7,941 nt of DNA from Vitrella brassicaformis CCMP3155 (lineage: Eukaryota; Protista; Chromerida). Below the pieces are notes generated by a model. The model made no database searches, was not told where the DNA came from, and saw only the letters and a program-made list of their open reading frames with translations. Shown piece after piece: positions 1-7,941 of the stretch. The stretch is taken from positions 1 to 7,941 of the forward strand of contig CDMY01000961.1 of NCBI GenBank assembly GCA_001179505.1. Direction: 5' to 3'. The position numbers and the translations under genes were made by a program. Position 1 is the stretch's first letter, and the number at the start of each line of letters is the position of its first letter.

Positions 1-260
1 CAAGACAGCGTGCCGCCTGTGTGCATTGCAAATTCATTTGTGTGTGACTTTATAGTGATGCGCGTGTGTGACGTCCTGTGTGTGTGGCCCGAGTGCAAAG
101 CACCGGCCGGCGTGTATCGCCTGGGCGGTCCCGTGCTCAGTAGATGAAATGATTCCTGAGCTTTCATGCGCTGTCAAGTAAGTTTTCGATTGCCTCGTTT
201 TTCTATCACCTCGCTGTATGTGCGTGTGTGTGTGGCCGACCCCTACCTACCCAACTTGGC
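1..260. repeat. Left arm of a long-range inverted repeat (partner 5226-5485); it is the 3' flank/UTR of an IRG-like GTPase gene copy on the + strand
   Basis: 1-250 is the reverse complement of 5236-5485 with 3 mismatches. 5485 lies 32 nt downstream of the predicted stop (5517) of the - strand GTPase gene. The match runs off the window start and ends at ~260. Confidence 0.95.
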
Positions 261-335
261 CGACAGGTGGGCAGAACGATGAACTCTGATGAAATAGGCC
301 ACTCATTTCCATTCCTTGGTGTGTGCTTCACTCAG

Positions 336-3145
336 TCTTGGTCTCGAGTGGCGCGGCGAGGAGGCCAGCCTTGTGGCTTACCGACCAGACGGCGAGGCCA
401 GGCACGACGAGCGTGTCTTCAGTGTGTCTGACATCACCTCATCCCGGCTCATCCTGCGTGCCTTCGCCCAAGCGGCGCACCACCGCAACGCCACGGCTGG
501 CGACGGTGCAACCATGGTCGACGTGCGGCGGATCAAGCTGCAGGCACAGCCGACGGACAAGCATGCTGTCGACAAAGGCACGAGTGCTGGTACGGGGTCC
601 AAGGGTCCGGCACATCATGACGGTGGCGGGGCGGATGTGTGTGGTGTTGGGGGCGATGACGACATGGATTGGGCTGATGACGTGTTTTCGCGTGACGGAC
701 AGCCGAGGCGCAAGGCCGGCAAGGGCAAGACCGTCAGCCGCAAACCTGCCGAGCACCAGTCAGCCGTGCAGGGCGTCCACTGGTGTGAGCGGGATCAGGC
801 CTGGCAAGCGAAGTGGCGCAGCACGAGGGACGGCAAGCAGGAGTGGAAGCAGTTCTACGTCAGGGAACATGGCTTCCACAAAGCAAAGGTACCGGCATCG
901 CATTCCAGCACCCCACCTCCATCTCACTCTCTATTTCCTCTCACGTATGGATCAGGCGTTGGCCGAGCAGCATCGTCTCGAGATGGAGCGCATTGGCCGG
1001 GCGGCGGTCAGGAGGAGAGCCAAGCATCAGAGCGGCGTCAGGGGCGTCAGGGGCGCCAGCGGACCACCCCGGCGGCCCAGCTGACGTCGATCGAAGCGGG
1101 TCGAAGGGGCTCAGCGCGAGAGAGGCTGACGTGTTCGCACACCAGCTCATCGAGAGGGCAAGACGTGAGCAGCTGGAACTCCACACATTCAACGGCCGAG
1201 GCGGGTGAGTGAGGATCGCGATCCACGTACACAAGCCCTCTGTTTACCTACCTTTTTCTCCTTGTGTGTCATGCCATCATTCAGGCTGGGTATCAACTGG
1301 CATCCGCAAGGCCACGTGTTCAGGGTCAACATCAATCGGAAGTCAAAGGGCAAGGACGTGTGTGAGTACATGACATCGCTCACGGGCCGCCCCATCCGCC
1401 GTGCCGACATCGTCAACTCATTTCGCCAGGGTGTTTTGCGCCGGAATGAGGTCTTCACTGAGGCCCTCAGCAGCGATGCTATCTTGATCGACATCAGCTG
1501 GCTCGACGACGACATGAGCGATGCCGATGGGCGCCAGGATGGGTCATCCGATGAGAGCATCCCCCTGGTGCGCAAGGGGCGAAGGAAGGGTCCATTGGTT
1601 AAGCGGCAGAGTGACGACGCGGAGGAGATCTCAGGCCCCCCGGATATCCAGAGATCCCGGGCCCCCCTCCCTTCCATTGGGGGCGGCAAGCGAGGGGCTG
1701 CTGAACACCGGTCATCCTCAGACTCAGAGTGGCTGGGCTCTTCGTCACCATCATCCGGTGGAGAGCGACGTGACAGCGACTTCCATGACGGCCGCGGCCC
1801 GTGCCCACCGTCTCGCCCCCGTCGCAAGCAAATCGTTCACCGCCACAAGCAGCCACATGGGGGGAAGGGTCTGACTGGGCTGGCGGATGGGCAGCTGCGA
1901 AACGCGCAGAGCGGCGGCATCGACGAGGTGGGGAGTGGTTCAGATGATTCGGCGCGGTGCTGGAAGTGCGGCAAGGGCGACAACGAGAAGCTTCTGCTAT
2001 TGTGTGACAACCGGGGCTGCTCTGCGGCCTACCACACCTACTGCGTCCAGCTGACAGCCGTCCCGGAGGGGCAGTGGTTCTGTCCCAAATGCACGCACAA
2101 CAGCGATGCCCTGCTGTCTGCCCCTGCCCAGCCAACGGGCACTCGTCAGACGCGTCGCATCAAAGGCCAAGGGGACCCGCCGCGTCGCCCCGCCCCCAAG
2201 CGCAAGACTGTCGACCGCAAGAGAGCGCGCGATGAGGCCGACCTGGATGGGCTCACTGGGACTGCCCTCGCCAAGGCCCTAGCGGACCGACTGATACGAC
2301 GCTTCAACGACGCCTGTCCGCCCGCCAATGGAGGGTGAGCAACACACACGACAAGGGGCAGCGACATATCTTTGCATCCTATCTTTGGCTTCTCGTCAGA
2401 GTCGGCGTCTGTATGACTTCACCGAGACGTTTCGCCGCGTACTTTGACAGCCAGGGCAAGTACCTGGGCTTCCGCAAGTTCGTCATCGATGGTCCCGACT
2501 CCCGCGGCAGCATCATCGATGCGCTCCGCCAATGTGTGGCGTACCGCAACACCATCCACCGTGACCAACTCGGCGACCGTGCGACCATTATCGACCTCTC
2601 ATGGCTCGACCGGCAGCAGCAGGGGGGCGAGGAGGAGCTGGGCCTGTCGGTGCGTGATCAATCATCCGACCGCAGCCCATCTCGGAGCACCGCCGCCGAG
2701 ATGCGGCTCTCGCCAACAGCAGCCCATCCGTAGCGGAGAGGCGGTCGAGGGCACTGAGGACCAGCAGCCCATGACACACGCCCAGCGGATGGCCCTCTGT
2801 CGTCTGTTTGGTCAAGTGGGTCACAACATTGGGGCGATGCTGGCGGCCGTCCCCTCTCTGAGCTTTGCGTCCATCGACTCGTTTGTGCGTCATGAGCTGC
2901 CGGCCATGGTGGGGCAGCGCGACGGCGAGGACATCAAGGAAGCCGCCAGTCGATTCATCAAACAGCTTCACCACCCCGGTCACCAGCACACCACACCAGC
3001 CCTGCCCAAGCCGCTCAAGGCGACAGATGACGAGCAGCTGCCGAGTGGTGGCGAGCTGGCCGACATCGACATGACGATGCGGCCGCCATCCTATCAGCGC
3101 GTCCATGTCCCCAAGACACGCGATTCGCCTCAACATGGGATGCAT
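336..3145 (+). CDS. Multi-exon ApiAP2 / AP2-like repeat / PHD-finger chromatin or transcription factor; probably a disrupted copy (no 5' exon visible, frame break at ~1045-1080)
   Basis: Predicted exons 336-888, 956-1204, 1285-2334, 2400-2649, 2720-3145. GT-AG introns 889-955 (67 nt), 1205-1284 (80), 2335-2399 (65), and tentatively 2650-2719 (70, restores frame). Encodes [15 protein letters not shown]...[14 protein letters not shown]|[11 protein letters not shown] (AP2), a C4HC3 PHD and a basic NLS-like [12 protein letters not shown]. The 3' end is uncertain. Confidence 0.72.
766..1000 (+). other. Canonical apicomplexan-type AP2 DNA-binding domain, split by a phase-0 intron (889-955)
   Basis: [55 protein letters not shown] fits the ApiAP2 pattern GVxW...WxAxW...GK..KxFxV..xGF..AK.LA...R. 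Confidence 0.88.
1958..2092 (+). other. PHD finger (C4HC3)
   Basis: CWKC...[10 protein letters not shown]...YHTYC...[11 protein letters not shown] has all eight Zn ligands with typical spacing and the conserved W before the last CxxC. Confidence 0.95.
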
Positions 3146-3171
3146 GTGTGTGTGTGTGTGTGTGTTTGTGT
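3146..3171. repeat. (TG)n microsatellite
   Basis: Near-perfect GT dinucleotide run with one interruption. Confidence 0.9.
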
Positions 3172-3197
3172 GGGGGTGGGGTGGGGGGGTGGGGGGG
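3172..3197 (+). other. G-quadruplex-forming motif G5-T-G4-T-G7-T-G7
   Basis: gggggtggggtgggggggtggggggg: four G-runs of at least 4 nt with single-T loops. Confidence 0.75.
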
Positions 3198-3586: not shown

Positions 3587-3610
3587 ACAGACAGACAGAC
3601 AGACAGACAG
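3587..3610. repeat. (ACAG)6 microsatellite
   Basis: acagacagacagacagacagacag. Confidence 0.9.
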
Positions 3611-4337: not shown

Positions 4338-4791
4338 TCATTTCATTTTGCTGGCCATGGAGACGCCCCCCTTCTTGGTGTCGATGGACACGTGCGACAG
4401 CACACGGCTGCAGCCCTTCTCCAGCAGCATCGTGTGGGCCTTCTTGACGATCTCAAGCACCTGGTCCATGCTGCCCTCCACACATGTCGCCATCTGACAC
4501 ACACAGACACACACACACAGAGCACACAGAAAGACCACACGCGTGCACACTGTTGGGTGTGTGTGTGTCTGTGAGTGTGTGGCGTCTGGTCTCACCGGTC
4601 CGACTTCTCCCTTGACTCCGCTCATGGACTTGATCATGTCGATGACCTCGTCTATCATCTTGTACTAAACCACACACACACAGCACAGAGACATGCATGT
4701 GGCGAGGGATCAGCGGAATCTCATGAGCGGTCTCTACGAGTGACTGATTGAGGGAGTGGTTGATGGGCATGATAATGAGTGTGTGTAGCAT
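4338..4791 (-). CDS. Thiamine-binding protein family (DUF77 / COG0011 / MTH1187-YqgV-like), ~92 aa, 3 exons
   Basis: Exons 4791-4738 (tentative, weak gtagag donor), 4664-4596, 4493-4338; phase-0 introns of 73 and 102 nt. Product MLHTLIIMPINHSLNQSL/YKMIDEVIDMIKSMSGVKGEVGP/MATCVEGSMDQVLEIVKKAHTMLLEKGCSRVLSHVSIDTKKGGVSMASKMK* matches the family signature EVGPMxTxxEGxxDxVxxxxKxAH...G..RV...xxID. Confidence 0.85.
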
Positions 4792-5033: not shown

Positions 5034-5259
5034 CACACAGACCGTACACACAGATGCAGCCAAGTTGGGTAGGTAGGGGTGGGCCACACACAGACACACA
5101 CACACACACACAGACACACACAGACACACACACAGACAGACAGACAGACACACAGACAGACAGACACACAGACAGACAGACAGACACACAGACAGACAGA
5201 CACACAGACCGTACACACAGACGCAGCCAAGGTAAGTAGGTAGGGGTCGGCCACACACA
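5034..5259. repeat. 59-bp direct repeat (5034-5092 and 5201-5259) flanking a compound (CA)n/(CAGA)n microsatellite
   Basis: cacacagaccgtacacacaga[t/c]gcagccaag[ttgg/gtaa]gtaggtaggggt[g/c]ggccacacaca; 54/59 identical, offset 167 bp. Confidence 0.9.
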
Positions 5260-5485
5260 CACGCACATACAGCGAAGTGATAGGAAAACGAGGCAATCGA
5301 AAACTTACTTGACAGCGCATGAAAGCTCAGGAATCATTTCATCTACCGAGCACGGGACCGCCCAGGCGATACACGCCGGCCGGTGCTTTGCACTCGGGCC
5401 ACACACACAGGACGTCACACACGCGCATCACTATAAAGTCACACACAAATGAATTTGCAATGCACACAGGCGGCACGCTGTCTTG
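5226..5485. repeat. Right arm of the long-range inverted repeat (partner 1-260)
   Basis: Reverse complement of the window start; 3 mismatches over 250 nt. Confidence 0.95.
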
Positions 5486-5516: not shown

Positions 5517-6665
5517 CTAGGCGACCATTCTGCGAGAAACAGACAGACAGACAGAGCACATACATCATCCATCTGGCGGTGCTCTGCCCTGCCCCGCCCT
5601 GCCCTGCTGACCTGCGGGCATCCCGCGACACTTCATTGGCCACGGCAGCGGAGATGTCCTGGAAGAGCCGGTAGAAGTCCCTGACGCGGAAGTCGGCGAC
5701 GTCGTGGATCCCCTTGACGTAGTTGCGGCTCGTGAGATAGATGCGCTCGGGGGGGATTTGGATTGCTGGCACGCCAGACTCTGCTGGTGGGTTTGCGGCC
5801 TTGGAGATCACATTGGCGCGGGCGGCCTCGTACGTCTGCTCAGCCGTGGGAGGCTCCTGGCCTGCGTCCTCAGCGTCGGCAATGGCGTTCTCGACGGCGT
5901 TGTCCATCTTGCTGCGCACAACGAGCACAGGGACGCGATGACGAGGGCACTCCTTGTAGATCTGACACGAGAAGACACACACGGAGACAGAGACACGGAG
6001 AGAGGGGTGACAGTCCAGAAAAGAGCCCTCCCGGTCATGTGCTGACCTTGTGGTCAATCGCGCGCAACCGATCGGCGACGACGAGCAGGACGATGGTGGC
6101 GTATCTGATCCCAATCATTCGGGGATATGTATCCTCGGGCACAAGCAACGTCCCTGCCCCTGGGCAGAAGCGACAGAGAAAGGATACACAAACTCTCCTC
6201 TGTTTCTCTGTGCCCCCCGTCTCTCTGCTTCCTTTGCCCCGTCACTGCCCGCCCACCCGGTGTGTCGATCATGATAGCCAGGTGGAAGAGTGGGCTGGCC
6301 TCGGCGAAGGTGTAGACGGTGGGTCTCTCCGTGCACTCGCCAAGAGCACTCACAGCGGCCCGCGCAACAGTGCGGTCTCCCCTGCCCAGCGCGTGGACAT
6401 TGCCGATAACTTGCATGAGCAGGTTGATCAGCTTCGACTTGCCGGTGCCGCAGGCCCCGCAGATCATCACCTGTGCCCTGTTCGGGTGATCCTTCATGGC
6501 CTGCTTCTGGTACTCGGTCCTCGGATAGTCCTGCTCGAACTTGCGCTTCCTCTCCTTTTCCTCGGCGAGGGCCTTGCGGGCTCCCTCATCTTGCGCGGCA
6601 AACAATTGTTGCTCGTGACGGCGCTGCAGGTCTGCCTCGTTCTGATGACGATTGGGTTTCGCCAT
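5517..6665 (-). CDS. IRG / interferon-inducible GTPase (IIGP)-like P-loop GTPase, copy A: catalytic motifs intact, N-terminally truncated, ~294 aa
   Basis: Exons 6665-6257, 6159-6047, 5961-5612, 5529-5517 (885 nt, in frame, TAG); GT-AG introns of 97, 85 and 82 nt. G1 GACGTGKS, G2 ECTERPT, G3 DTPG|AGTLLVPEDTY, G4 VRSKMD. The segment DTPGAGT..P.DTY..MIG.RY...VLLVVA.R....D..I.K......V..VRSKMD parallels the IRG core (DLPGxG...P..Y......Y......S.RF...D...K.......FVRTKxD). Start codon uncertain because the frame stays open upstream. Confidence 0.85.
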
Positions 6666-6675
6666 CTCTACGGCC
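5754..6675. repeat. Left arm of the inner inverted repeat (partner 7011-7941)
   Basis: 5754-6644 pairs with 7051-7941 without indels (coordinate sum 13695); 50 mismatches in 891 nt. Weaker homology with a 9-nt indel extends to 6675/7011. Confidence 0.97.
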
Positions 6676-6733
6676 CGTCCGAGCCGCGAGTTTCCCGGAA
6701 TGCCTTCATTGCGAGCTTTTCTCCGGGCTAGCA

Positions 6734-6772
6734 GCTCGGGATCGCACCATGGGATGCATGGCGATCCCGAGC
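6734..6772. promoter_or_regulatory. GC-rich hairpin/palindrome in the intergenic spacer of the divergent GTPase pair (candidate bidirectional promoter element)
   Basis: gctcgggatcgc-ac-catg-ggatg-catg-gcgatcccgagc: 12-bp perfect outer stem plus 4-bp inner stem, 2-nt bulge, 5-nt loop. Function is inferred from position only. Confidence 0.5.
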
Positions 6773-6882
6773 GCCGTTGTGATGGATCCCGAGCCGCACT
6801 GTACTGTACGCTCGCAATCTTCTTTCTTTCCGCTTTCCGCCGAGTTTCTTTTTCTTCGTTTCTCTTCGCTTCTTTCCGCACT

Positions 6883-7941
6883 ATGGGTGCCTCCTCCTCG
6901 ACGCCGGTTCTGCCCTTCATTTCTGACTTTGTCCTCAGACGCATCTTCGGCATCGGAGGGGGTGGAGGCGGTCCAGTTCCAGAAGCGGTTCGTCGGGCGG
7001 CCAAAGGTGCGGCCGAAGAGATGGAGAAGCAGGCAGAAGCCAACCGTCAGCAGAACGAGGCAGACCTGCAGCGCCGTCACGAGCAACAATTGTTTGCCGC
7101 GCAAGATGAGGGAGCCCGCAAGGCCCTCGCCGAGGAAGAGGAGAGGAAGCGCAAGTTCGAGCAGGACTATCCGAGGACCGAGTACCAGAAGCAGGCCATG
7201 GAGGATCACCCGAACAGGGCACAGGTCATGCTGTGTGGAAACGCGGGCACCAGCAAGTCGACCCTGATCAACCTGCTGATGATGGTGGTCAGCCATCTCT
7301 ACGCGCTGGCCCGCGGAGGCAGCACTGTCGCGCGGGTCGCGGTTAGTGCTCTTGGCGAGTGCACGGAGAGACCCACCGTCTACACCTTCGCCGAGGACAG
7401 CCCACTCTTCCACCTGGCTATCATGATCGCCACACCGGGTGGGCGGACAGTGACGGGGCAAAGGAAGCAGAGAGACGGGGGGCGCAGAGAAACAGAGGAG
7501 AGTTTGTGTATCCTTTCTCTGTCGCTTCTGCCCAGGGGCAGGGACGTTGCTTGTGCCCGAGGATACATATCCCCGAATGATTGGGATCAGATACGCCACC
7601 ATTGTCCTCCTCGTCGTCGCCGAGCGGTTGCGCGCGATTGACCACAAGGTCAGCACATGACCGGGAGGGCTCTTTTCTGGACTGTCACCCCTCTCTCCGT
7701 GTCTCTGTCTCCGTGTGTGTCTTCTCGTGTCAGATCTACAAGGAATGCCTTGATCGTCGCGTCCCTGTGCTCGTTGTGCGCAGCAAGATGGACAACGCCG
7801 TCGAGAACGCCATTGACGACGCTGAGGACGAAGGCCAGGAGCCTCCCACCGCTGAGCAGACGTACGAGGCCGCCCGCGCCAATGTGATCTCCAAGGCCGC
7901 AAACCCACCAGCAGAGTCTGGCGTGCCATCAATCCAAATCC
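6883..7941 (+). CDS. IRG/IIGP-like GTPase, copy B: N-myristoylation motif, altered G1 and G3 (predicted pseudo-GTPase), 3'-incomplete
   Basis: ATG at 6883 after a pyrimidine-rich leader. MGASSS (MGxxxS), amphipathic PFISDFVLRRIFG, Gly linker, charged coiled coil. Exons 6883-7438, 7536-7648, 7734->7941; introns 97 and 85 nt. G1 GNAGTSKS (7237-7260), G3 ATPG (7429-), G4 SKMD (7782-7793). Confidence 0.85.
7011..7941. repeat. Right arm of the inner inverted repeat (continues past the window end)
   Basis: Reverse complement of 5754-6675. Confidence 0.97.

What the first reader, a model, noticed from the sequence alone, without database searches (positions are those of the whole stretch)
5517..7941. 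Head-to-head IRG-like GTPase pair: one catalytically intact, one pseudo-GTPase, with complementary missing parts
Seen: two divergent paralogs with the same intron positions. Copy A (-) keeps G1 GACGTGKS, G3 DTPG and G4 SKMD but loses homology to B upstream of 6675, so it lacks the first ~43 codons. Copy B (+) has MGASSS plus an amphipathic helix but carries G->S at the invariant P-loop Gly (GNAGTSKS) and D->A in G3 (ATPG), with intact frame and splice sites in the part visible. Established: G1 Gly and G3 Asp are needed for GTP/Mg binding; mouse Irga6 is N-myristoylated; G1-variant IRGM (GMS) proteins regulate GKS effector IRGs through G-domain contacts. Inference: an independently evolved effector/regulator (or anchor/enzyme) GTPase pair in a probable alveolate, possibly cell-autonomous defence against intracellular parasites or viruses, with a layout like paired plant NLRs.
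Basis: partly seen in the sequence, partly recalled or inferred. Interest (0 to 1): 0.85.

Follow-up and report, generated by a model that had tools for sequence, protein, structure and literature searches.

The report
Inverted duplicate IRG-type GTPase genes
Two back-to-back genes in the alga Vitrella brassicaformis are recent mirror-image copies of one immunity-type (IRG-like) GTPase gene, one missing its front end and the other carrying two changes at catalytic residues, so they look like by-products of a fast-changing gene cluster and not an evolved two-protein defence module.

Summary
The sequence observation holds, but "divergent paralogs" is wrong. The window is a whole 7,941-nt contig of Vitrella brassicaformis CCMP3155.

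**What the pair is**
- Copies A (-) and B (+) are arms of an inverted duplication, 94% identical with introns included.
- They are about 97% identical outside a 118-nt island over the P-loop, helix 1 and the start of switch I.
- Both belong to the IRG-type G-domain family by Pfam, by profile against solved structures and by predicted fold.

**State of each copy**
- A is cut at the duplication breakpoint. It lacks B's promoter-proximal region and first 49 codons, and I found no RNA contig specific to it.
- B is complete once an overlapping scaffold is added (343 aa, intact frame). It is transcribed and spliced.
- B has Ser for a Gly found in 143 of 144 relatives, and Ala for an Asp found in 148 of 148.
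- A third copy, C, has the B-type island with intact motifs, but it is unpaired and carries a premature stop.

**Other evidence**
- B and C differ at about the neutral rate.
- Transcript contigs show further mosaic islands, which points to more copies or to gene conversion.

**Verdict**
This is a lineage-specific IRG-type cluster evolving by duplication, gene conversion and decay. B is a plausible pseudo-GTPase. An evolved effector/regulator pair is not supported. The scan had already noted the island and an inversion-switch idea on this same window.

The parts
6257..6665 (-). Copy A exon 1: ATG at the duplication breakpoint, N-terminal helix, G1 GACGTGKS, G3 DTPG.
   Evidence: Translation. 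It is identical to annotated protein P0001 (CEM37888.1).
6047..6159 (-). Copy A exon 2.
   Evidence: P0001 reads ...DTPGAGTLLV..., so the acceptor is the AG at 6160-6161. The equivalent B junction is seen in RNA.
5612..5961 (-). Copy A exon 3: G4 SKMD and the C-terminal helices.
5517..5529 (-). Copy A exon 4 (..RMVA, then stop).
   Evidence: P0001 C-terminus. The 82-nt skip 5530-5611 is seen only in B/C-type RNA contigs laid on this tail.
6883..7438 (+). Copy B exon 1: MGASSS, a hydrophobic helix, a Gly run, G1 GNAGTSKS and G3 ATPG.
   Evidence: It is 100% identical over 610 nt to transcript contigs L001 and L002.
7536..7648 (+). Copy B exon 2.
   Evidence: Spliced joints in RNA runs X6 and X12 and in L001/L002.
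7734..7941 (+). Copy B exon 3, cut by the contig end. It continues in CDMY01000348.1 (L004 6366-6507, with exon 4 at 6605-6617).
   Evidence: One search gives the 100% overlap of 398 nt. One search gives the 1032-nt ORF with one terminal stop.
5754..6663 (.). Inverted-repeat arm A. Homology with the B side continues to about 4740 when L004 is used.
7032..7941 (.). Inverted-repeat arm B.
6664..7031 (.). Spacer of 368 nt: 38 nt unique, then B's promoter and 5'UTR (homologous to copy C's upstream region), then B's first 49 codons.
   Evidence: DNA contigs cross both junctions with no mismatch (X1 records 3 and 4).
7227..7344 (+). Divergence island in B, 27% different from A, covering strand 1, the P-loop, helix 1 and the start of switch I. 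The A counterpart is 6351-6468.
   Evidence: Island dS is 0.47 against 0.05 elsewhere.
7252..7254 (+). B codon AGC (Ser) where A, C and the family have Gly. The A codon is 6441-6443.
   Evidence: The A at 7252 is also present in L001, L002, L005 and in the environmental run X13.
7429..7431 (+). B codon GCC (Ala) where A, C and all 148 relatives have Asp. The A codon is 6264-6266.
   Evidence: The C at 7430 is also present in X1, X12 and all four JGI contigs.
6724..6762 (.). Palindrome with 12-nt arms and a 15-nt loop in the upstream region shared by B and C. It may be a regulatory site.
   Evidence: Read. It is conserved in C's upstream region apart from a 1-nt deletion.
1..260 (+). Tail (3'UTR region) of a further plus-strand copy, cut by the contig start. 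It is the inverted partner of A's tail at 5226-5485 (98%).

Best explanation
The pair is the centre of a young inverted segmental duplication inside a small, Vitrella-specific cluster of IRG-type GTPase genes.

Copy states
- B is the full-length gene. It has a Met-Gly myristoylation-type start, a hydrophobic helix, a Gly linker, a long helix, an IRG-type G domain and short C-terminal helices (343 aa).
- A is a mirror copy that begins at the duplication breakpoint inside exon 1. It has lost the promoter-proximal region, the 5'UTR and 49 N-terminal codons, and its annotated ATG sits exactly at the breakpoint.
- C has intact motifs but a premature stop.

How the copies evolve
- They exchange sequence by gene conversion. 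In the 5' half B equals C, and in the 3' half A equals C.
- A 118-nt island over the P-loop, helix 1 and early switch I is the exception. It exists in two old types and in mosaics of them.
- Lesions accumulate in different copies: A is headless, B has catalytic-site substitutions, C has a nonsense codon.

What is shown and what is inferred
- Shown: the anatomy, family membership, B's transcription and splicing, and the conservation of the two residues.
- Inferred for B: Ser at the last P-loop Gly and Ala at the DxxG Asp should strongly weaken nucleotide and Mg binding. That would make B a membrane-tethered pseudo-GTPase or a gene on its way to decay.
- Inferred for A: it is silent or weakly expressed.
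- Inferred for intact family members: they work like IRGs, as GTP-dependent oligomers on membranes.
For: - Inverted arms are 94% identical with introns included. 32 of the 55 differences fall in 118 nt.
- The window is a whole contig, and A equals CEM37888.1.
- IRG membership: Pfam IIGP scores 28 bits against a cut-off of 24. phmmer finds 568 relatives, named IIGP/IRG where named. The family profile hits Irga6 at 7e-57, with the next family at 2e-12. The AF2 model has pLDDT 91.4 and all top fold hits are IRGs.
- Conservation: G75 is Gly in 143 of 144 relatives and D134 is Asp in 148 of 148.
- Copy C has the B-type island with GNAGTGKS and DTPG, a TAG at the third codon of exon 3, and a PPR gene upstream.
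- Mosaic ancestry and omega: B against C shows 2 synonymous and 7 non-synonymous changes. Island dS is 0.47 against 0.05 elsewhere.
- B is completed by scaffold 348.
- B is spliced and expressed.
- The A island is present in DNA runs but scores 0.00 in RNA run X12, and no A-type protein comes from any transcriptome.
- 31 of 142 relatives that begin with Met start with a myristoylation-type MG motif, so B and C look ancestral and A looks truncated.
Against: - A keeps an open frame, all four G motifs and its splice sites, which a dead copy need not keep.
- The run evidence comes from assembled contigs, which drop minor variants. IRG-type genes may also be inducible. Absence of A RNA is therefore weak evidence.
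- Two of roughly eight B-private amino-acid changes hit catalytic residues. My rough post hoc estimate for that is p about 0.03, which fits selection for inactivation better than random decay.
- The closest distinct Vitrella paralog, P0005, is expressed and has Ala at the same P-loop Gly. This hints at a tolerated P-loop-variant class.
- Introns are no more diverged than exons: 2 of 182 against 18 of 588 sites.
Confidence: 0.6

Rival explanations
1. A is catalytically competent and soluble. B is catalytically dead and lipid-anchored. They form an evolved enzyme/anchor or effector/regulator pair that is co-regulated from the shared 217-nt spacer and interacts through the G domains.
For: - B is an intact, spliced, expressed ORF with substitutions at two invariant catalytic residues.
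- A keeps all motifs and an open frame.
- IRG G domains dimerise, and GMS proteins regulate GKS proteins (PMC2532785).
- P0005 carries a variant at the same P-loop position.
- Catalytic residues are over-represented among B-private changes (post hoc).
Against: - No A-specific RNA was found.
- Copy C shares B's upstream region but has no partner.
- The copies are 97% identical outside the island, so the pair is very young.
- Omega between B and C is about 1.
- In other samples the Ser and Ala states appear uncoupled: Ser with Asp in X13, and Gly with Asp on a B head in X6. Contig chimerism could explain this.
- B's G1 is not of the GMS type.
Confidence: 0.13
2. A cassette or switch model. A is a silent, promoter-less donor whose island is copied in short tracts into expressed copies. 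Alternatively, recombination between the arms flips the spacer so that the promoter and lipidated head drive A. Either way the P-loop, helix 1 and switch I surface would be diversified.
For: - Transcript contigs L005 and L006 have a B head and a B-type island carrying A-type patches at 7252-7287 and 7319-7344.
- The switches fall between adjacent or nearly adjacent bases, and A and B share no stretch of 20 nt or more inside the island. A simple A+B assembly chimera is therefore unlikely.
- A has no detectable RNA yet keeps an open frame.
- The arms are in the same reading frame.
Against: - Unassembled extra paralogs explain the mosaics more simply. Both contig ends and a scaffold gap lie in this repeat, and at least four different tails exist.
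- DNA contigs cross both spacer junctions in the reference orientation only.
- No transcript has A-type bases at 7035-7245 behind the B head.
- No raw reads were available.
Confidence: 0.1
3. An assembly artefact: the palindrome or the A copy is a mis-join of reads from other paralogs.
For: The contig begins and ends inside repeats. X1 contigs contain no A arm.
Against: - Words from the A island occur at a share of 1.00 in six listed runs: DNA runs X2 and X23 of sample S2, runs X5, X10 and X11 of sample S1 (kind not stated), and X7 from a differently labelled organism.
- X1 contigs cross 6615-6825 and 6796-7080 with no mismatch, including five A-specific bases next to the spacer.
Confidence: 0.03

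Closest known systems
Mouse GKS-type IRG proteins (Irga6/IIGP1, Irgb6, Irgb10; Pfam PF05049)
   Same: - They share the IRG-type G domain: GxxxxGKS, D-x-P-G-x-G-T, a conserved Tyr, and (V)R-x-K-x-D.
- They give the best sequence-profile and fold matches.
- An N-terminal Met-Gly lipidation-type start is present in B and C.
- The family evolves by local duplication.
   Different: - The Vitrella proteins are only 294-343 aa.
- Most of the roughly 150-aa C-terminal helical domain is absent (TM by target 0.34-0.40).
- There is no interferon system in an alga.
- The function is untested.
IRGM (GMS) regulatory IRGs
   Same: They are family members with a non-canonical G1 motif that regulate canonical members (PMC2532785).
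   Different: - GMS proteins change Lys to Met and still depend on an intact G1.
- B changes the preceding Gly to Ser and also loses the G3 Asp.
- B's changes are private to one very young copy.
Vitrella paralog CEM36862.1 (P0005) and dinoflagellate IRG-type proteins (Symbiodinium 'Irgc', Pyrodinium)
   Same: - They are the nearest relatives outside the A/B/C group, at 36-40% identity.
- P0005 shares the C-terminal DFRV-DFYRL motif.
- P0005 has Ala at the same P-loop Gly.
   Different: - P0005 has a long coiled-coil N-terminus and no MG start in its longest form.
- It gives no Pfam hit.
- It is a single-copy gene at another locus.
Head-to-head paired plant NLRs (sensor/helper)
   Same: The orientation is divergent, with a short shared spacer.
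   Different: - NLR pairs are diverged, both expressed and conserved as pairs.
- Here the partners are 97% identical duplicates outside the island.
- One partner is truncated by the breakpoint, and the sister copy C is unpaired.

Membership tests
IRG-type G domain (Pfam IIGP PF05049 / PROSITE IRG-type G) | Sequence match above the curated threshold. | tested here: met
   P0001 scores 28.0 bits against a cut-off of 24, E 1.5e-6, over the G domain only. Single exons alone gave no hit. The truncated B protein P0003 does not reach it either.
IRG-type G domain (Pfam IIGP PF05049 / PROSITE IRG-type G) | Family-specific motifs: GxxxxGKS, DxPGxGT, a conserved Tyr after G3, and RxKxD. | tested here: met
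   A and C carry all of them. In 148 relatives these columns are 93-100% conserved. B fails at two of them.
IRG-type G domain (Pfam IIGP PF05049 / PROSITE IRG-type G) | The G-domain fold is closest to solved IRG structures. | tested here: met
   The top 36 PDB hits and top 12 Swiss-Prot hits are all IRGs, at E 1e-11 to 1e-8. The profile hits Irga6 at 7e-57 and the next family at 2e-12.
Canonical p47 IRG proteins | A protein of about 400 aa with N- and C-terminal helical domains flanking the G domain. | tested here: not met
   A is 294 aa and B is 343 aa. The model has one long N-terminal helix and short C-terminal helices. About 200-230 columns align, and TM by target is 0.34-0.40.
Canonical p47 IRG proteins | GTP-dependent oligomerisation on target membranes, and inducible expression. 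| not testable with these tools
   This needs biochemistry and infection or induction experiments.
IRGM/GMS regulators | G1 lysine replaced by methionine (GX4GMS). | tested here: not met
   B reads GNAGTSKS, so the Lys is retained.
Paired head-to-head immune gene modules (NLR-pair-like) | The pairing is conserved among paralogs or orthologs, and both partners are expressed. | tested here: not met
   Copy C shares B's upstream region but its neighbour is a PPR gene. No A-specific RNA was found. No ortholog outside Vitrella is closer than 40%.
N-myristoylated GTPases | An N-terminal M-G-{EDRKHPFYW}-x-x-[STAGCN]-{P} motif. | tested here: met
   B (MGASSST) and C (MGNVVST) fit the motif and A does not. 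31 of 142 relatives that begin with Met also fit. Actual lipidation was not tested.

The most novel reading that the evidence does not exclude
The island over the P-loop, helix 1 and early switch I is kept in two old types and shuffled in short tracts among copies. The promoter-less but open-framed A would serve as a donor cassette, and B as a lipid-anchored dead partner. That would be a gene-conversion-driven diversification system for an IRG-type GTPase interface in a free-living relative of apicomplexans.
Probability: 0.1. Interest if true: 0.7.

Novelty: new member of a known kind. Interest (0 to 1): 0.35.

Why it matters
IRG-type GTPases are best known as interferon-driven weapons of mice against Toxoplasma. 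[quoted passage not shown] I found no paper describing this family in chromerids.

The cluster offers natural variants at two invariant catalytic residues, together with a near-identical intact sister copy. That makes a ready-made comparison for asking what an IRG pseudo-GTPase does. As it stands, though, the "pair" is ordinary gene-family turnover, and the protein is already labelled "IRG-type G domain-containing" in public databases.

Tried and rejected
- Pfam on single exons gave only generic P-loop noise. The full-length protein was needed.
- An exact-pattern scan of JGI metagenome contigs with a 23-mer conserved in all copies found nothing.
- Paper searches for IRG in Vitrella or chromerids, and for PF05049, found nothing relevant.
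- Read laying could use only Logan contigs, which collapse B with C and pop minor bubbles. It could not decide whether A is expressed, nor how the variants at 7252, 7337 and 7430 are linked.
- I first took L001 and L002 as clean B transcripts. They are scaffolded B/C chimeras with a run of N.
- I considered that scaffold 275's end (copy C) abuts the window start. This is unproven, and the window instead overlaps scaffold 348.
- An IFI44-like affiliation, suggested by other notes on this genome, was rejected. The best sequence and fold matches are IRG.
- An A-B heterodimer prediction was not possible with the single-chain tool.
- Full-length B could not be folded because it spans two records.
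Full report
**What is there**

The window is an entire 7,941-nt contig of Vitrella brassicaformis CCMP3155. The annotated protein of copy A (P0001 = CEM37888.1, 294 aa) has this contig as its only and longest source.

Coordinates of the two genes:

| Copy | Strand | Exons |
|---|---|---|
| A | minus | 6665-6257, 6159-6047, 5961-5612, 5529-5517 |
| B | plus | 6883-7438, 7536-7648, and 7734 to the contig end |

**The copies are not divergent paralogs**

- They form an inverted repeat, 5754-6663 against 7032-7941. The arms are 910 nt long with no gaps and 94% complementary, introns included.
- Of the 55 differences, 32 lie in 118 nt (7227-7344 in B, 6351-6468 in A). Outside that island the arms are about 97% identical, and intron 2 is identical.
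- The island has dS 0.47 and dN 0.28. The rest has dS 0.05 and dN 0.025.
- In the AlphaFold model of A (pLDDT 91.4, pTM 0.86), the island covers strand 1, the P-loop, helix 1 and the disordered start of switch I.

**The breakpoint beheads A**

- Homology stops at 6663/7032, in the same reading frame.
- A's annotated ATG (6665-6663) aligns with codon 50 of B.
- A therefore lacks B's upstream region, 5'UTR and 49 codons: MGASSS, a hydrophobic helix and a Gly run.
- Only 38 unique bases separate A's arm from the upstream region that B shares with copy C.

**B is complete**

- Window 7544-7941 is 100% identical to CDMY01000348.1 immediately after a 300-N gap (L004 5968-6365).
- Continuing there, B has a GT..AG third intron and ends ..RMVA-stop. 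The coding sequence is 1032 nt and the protein 343 aa.
- The annotated fragment P0157 covers exons 2-4.
- The B-side homology runs on to sequence that matches window 5145-4740, so the duplicated arms are at least about 1.9 kb long.

**There are more than two copies**

- Copy C (P0002 = CEL98626.1) lies at the very end of the 558-kb scaffold CDMY01000275.1. It is 98% identical to B over 972 nt.
- C has its own start (MGNVVS), shares B's upstream region at 94%, and has the B-type island with intact GNAGTGKS and DTPG.
- C carries TAG at the third codon of exon 3, and its upstream neighbour is a PPR gene, not a GTPase.
- Across the variable sites, the 5' half shows A against B=C at 41 sites. From 7430 onward most sites show B against A=C. 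This is a gene-conversion mosaic.
- Window 1-260 is the tail of yet another plus-strand copy, 98% identical to A's tail.

**Family**

- Full-length A passes Pfam IIGP: 28 bits, cut-off 24.
- An exhaustive phmmer search gives 568 relatives. The nearest are a Vitrella paralog (P0005, 40% identity), basidiomycete "interferon-inducible GTPase-domain" proteins, a fish protein, and dinoflagellate proteins including Symbiodinium "Irgc".
- A profile of 56 relatives hits Irga6 at 7e-57, and the next family (EngA) at 2e-12.
- All top fold hits are IRGs. Only about 200-230 residues align, and the large C-terminal helical domain of p47 IRGs is missing.
- Conclusion: IRG-type G domain, yes. Canonical p47 architecture, no.

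**The two B substitutions**

| Position (A numbering) | B has | State in relatives |
|---|---|---|
| G75, the last Gly of GxxxxGKS | Ser | Gly in 143 of 144; the one exception is Ala in Vitrella P0005 |
| D134, the DxxG Asp | Ala | Asp in 148 of 148 |

From general GTPase knowledge, this Gly and this Asp contact the beta-phosphate and the Mg-water. B is therefore probably badly impaired in nucleotide binding. This is an inference and was not tested.

**Expression**

- Four JGI transcript contigs from sample 3300017297 carry B's 5'UTR, head and exon 1 with introns removed. Two of them, L001 and L002, are 100% identical to the window over 610 nt and carry Ser, Val and Ala. They are scaffolded chimeras with C (a run of N and the C-type TAG).
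- Logan contigs of two putative RNA runs show the same spliced junctions. X6 carries B-specific exons 2 and 3 without the TAG.
- The Ser state also appears in a 2025 marine-sediment metagenome, together with Asp. The Ala state appears in X1 and X12. Neither state is private to the assembly, but their linkage cannot be trusted from contigs.
- For A, words from its island are held by DNA runs but score 0.00 in RNA run X12.
- No RNA contig covers 5978-6715.
- No transcript-derived protein with an A-type exon 1 exists among 5.8 billion clusters.
- This is negative evidence from contigs only.

**Unexpected result**

Transcript contigs L005 and L006 have B-type islands carrying A-type patches, at 7319-7344 and 7252-7287. 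The switches fall between adjacent or nearly adjacent bases, and A and B share no stretch of 20 nt or more inside the island, so an A+B graph chimera is unlikely. The patches therefore indicate further expressed variants. The simplest source is unassembled paralogs, because contig ends and a scaffold gap all fall in this repeat. Ongoing short-tract conversion is the less likely source.

**Selection**

- B against C shows 2 synonymous and 7 non-synonymous differences, omega about 1.
- A against B outside the island gives omega about 0.5, not distinguishable from 1 with 18 changes.
- Two of roughly eight B-private replacements hit catalytic residues. My rough post hoc estimate is p about 0.03.

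**Verdict**

This is a lineage-specific IRG-type cluster evolving by inverted and segmental duplication, gene conversion and decay.
- A is a 5'-truncated copy.
- B is a full-length, expressed, probable pseudo-GTPase.
- C is a nonsense copy.

An evolved effector/regulator or NLR-pair-like module is not supported (about 0.13). A cassette or inversion mechanism is not excluded (about 0.1). An assembly artefact is unlikely, because DNA contigs cross both spacer junctions without mismatch and the A island is present in several DNA runs.

Noticed in passing
window 7544-7941; L004 5668-6365 (CDMY01000348.1): This 7.9-kb contig overlaps the sequence just after a 300-N scaffold gap at 100% identity. 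It therefore probably belongs in that gap. The public gene model there (P0157, 144 aa) is only the 3' part of copy B.
   Followed up: yes
L003 10001-10878 (end of CDMY01000275.1): Copy C has intact GTPase motifs but an in-frame TAG at the third codon of exon 3. The same TAG is present in transcript contigs, so the nonsense copy is transcribed.
   Followed up: partly
L005 and L006 (JGI 3300017297 transcript contigs), equivalent to window 7252-7344: Expressed island variants mix B-type and A-type segments over a few tens of bases. This implies unassembled paralogs or short-tract gene conversion.
   Followed up: partly
P0005 / P0154 (Vitrella CEM36862.1, another scaffold): The nearest distinct paralog is expressed. 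It reads GVNGTAKT, with Ala at the same P-loop Gly that is Ser in B, and DHPG. It has a long coiled-coil N-terminus and gives no Pfam hit.
   Followed up: partly
window 6724-6762: A perfect 12-nt-arm palindrome around an ATGCAT core lies in the upstream region shared by B and C. Its right arm is repeated again about 30 nt downstream. It may be a promoter element.
   Followed up: no
window 316-3100 (+): A multi-exon gene encodes a weak AP2 domain (23 bits, below the cut-off) and a PHD finger (32 bits). Its likely first exon lies inside the 1-260 repeat.
   Followed up: partly
window 4338-4700 (-); L004 3156-3700: A small Thiamine_BP (PF01910) gene lies here. A copy with 86% DNA identity sits in opposite orientation on the other side of the scaffold gap, which suggests an older and larger inverted duplication around the GTPase cluster.
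   Followed up: partly
window 5086-5215 and 3130-3190, 3590-3610: Long (CA)n and (CAGA)n microsatellites are present. The 71-nt unit that flanks the one at 5034-5271 is itself duplicated (89%) and marks the outer part of the repeated tail.
   Followed up: no
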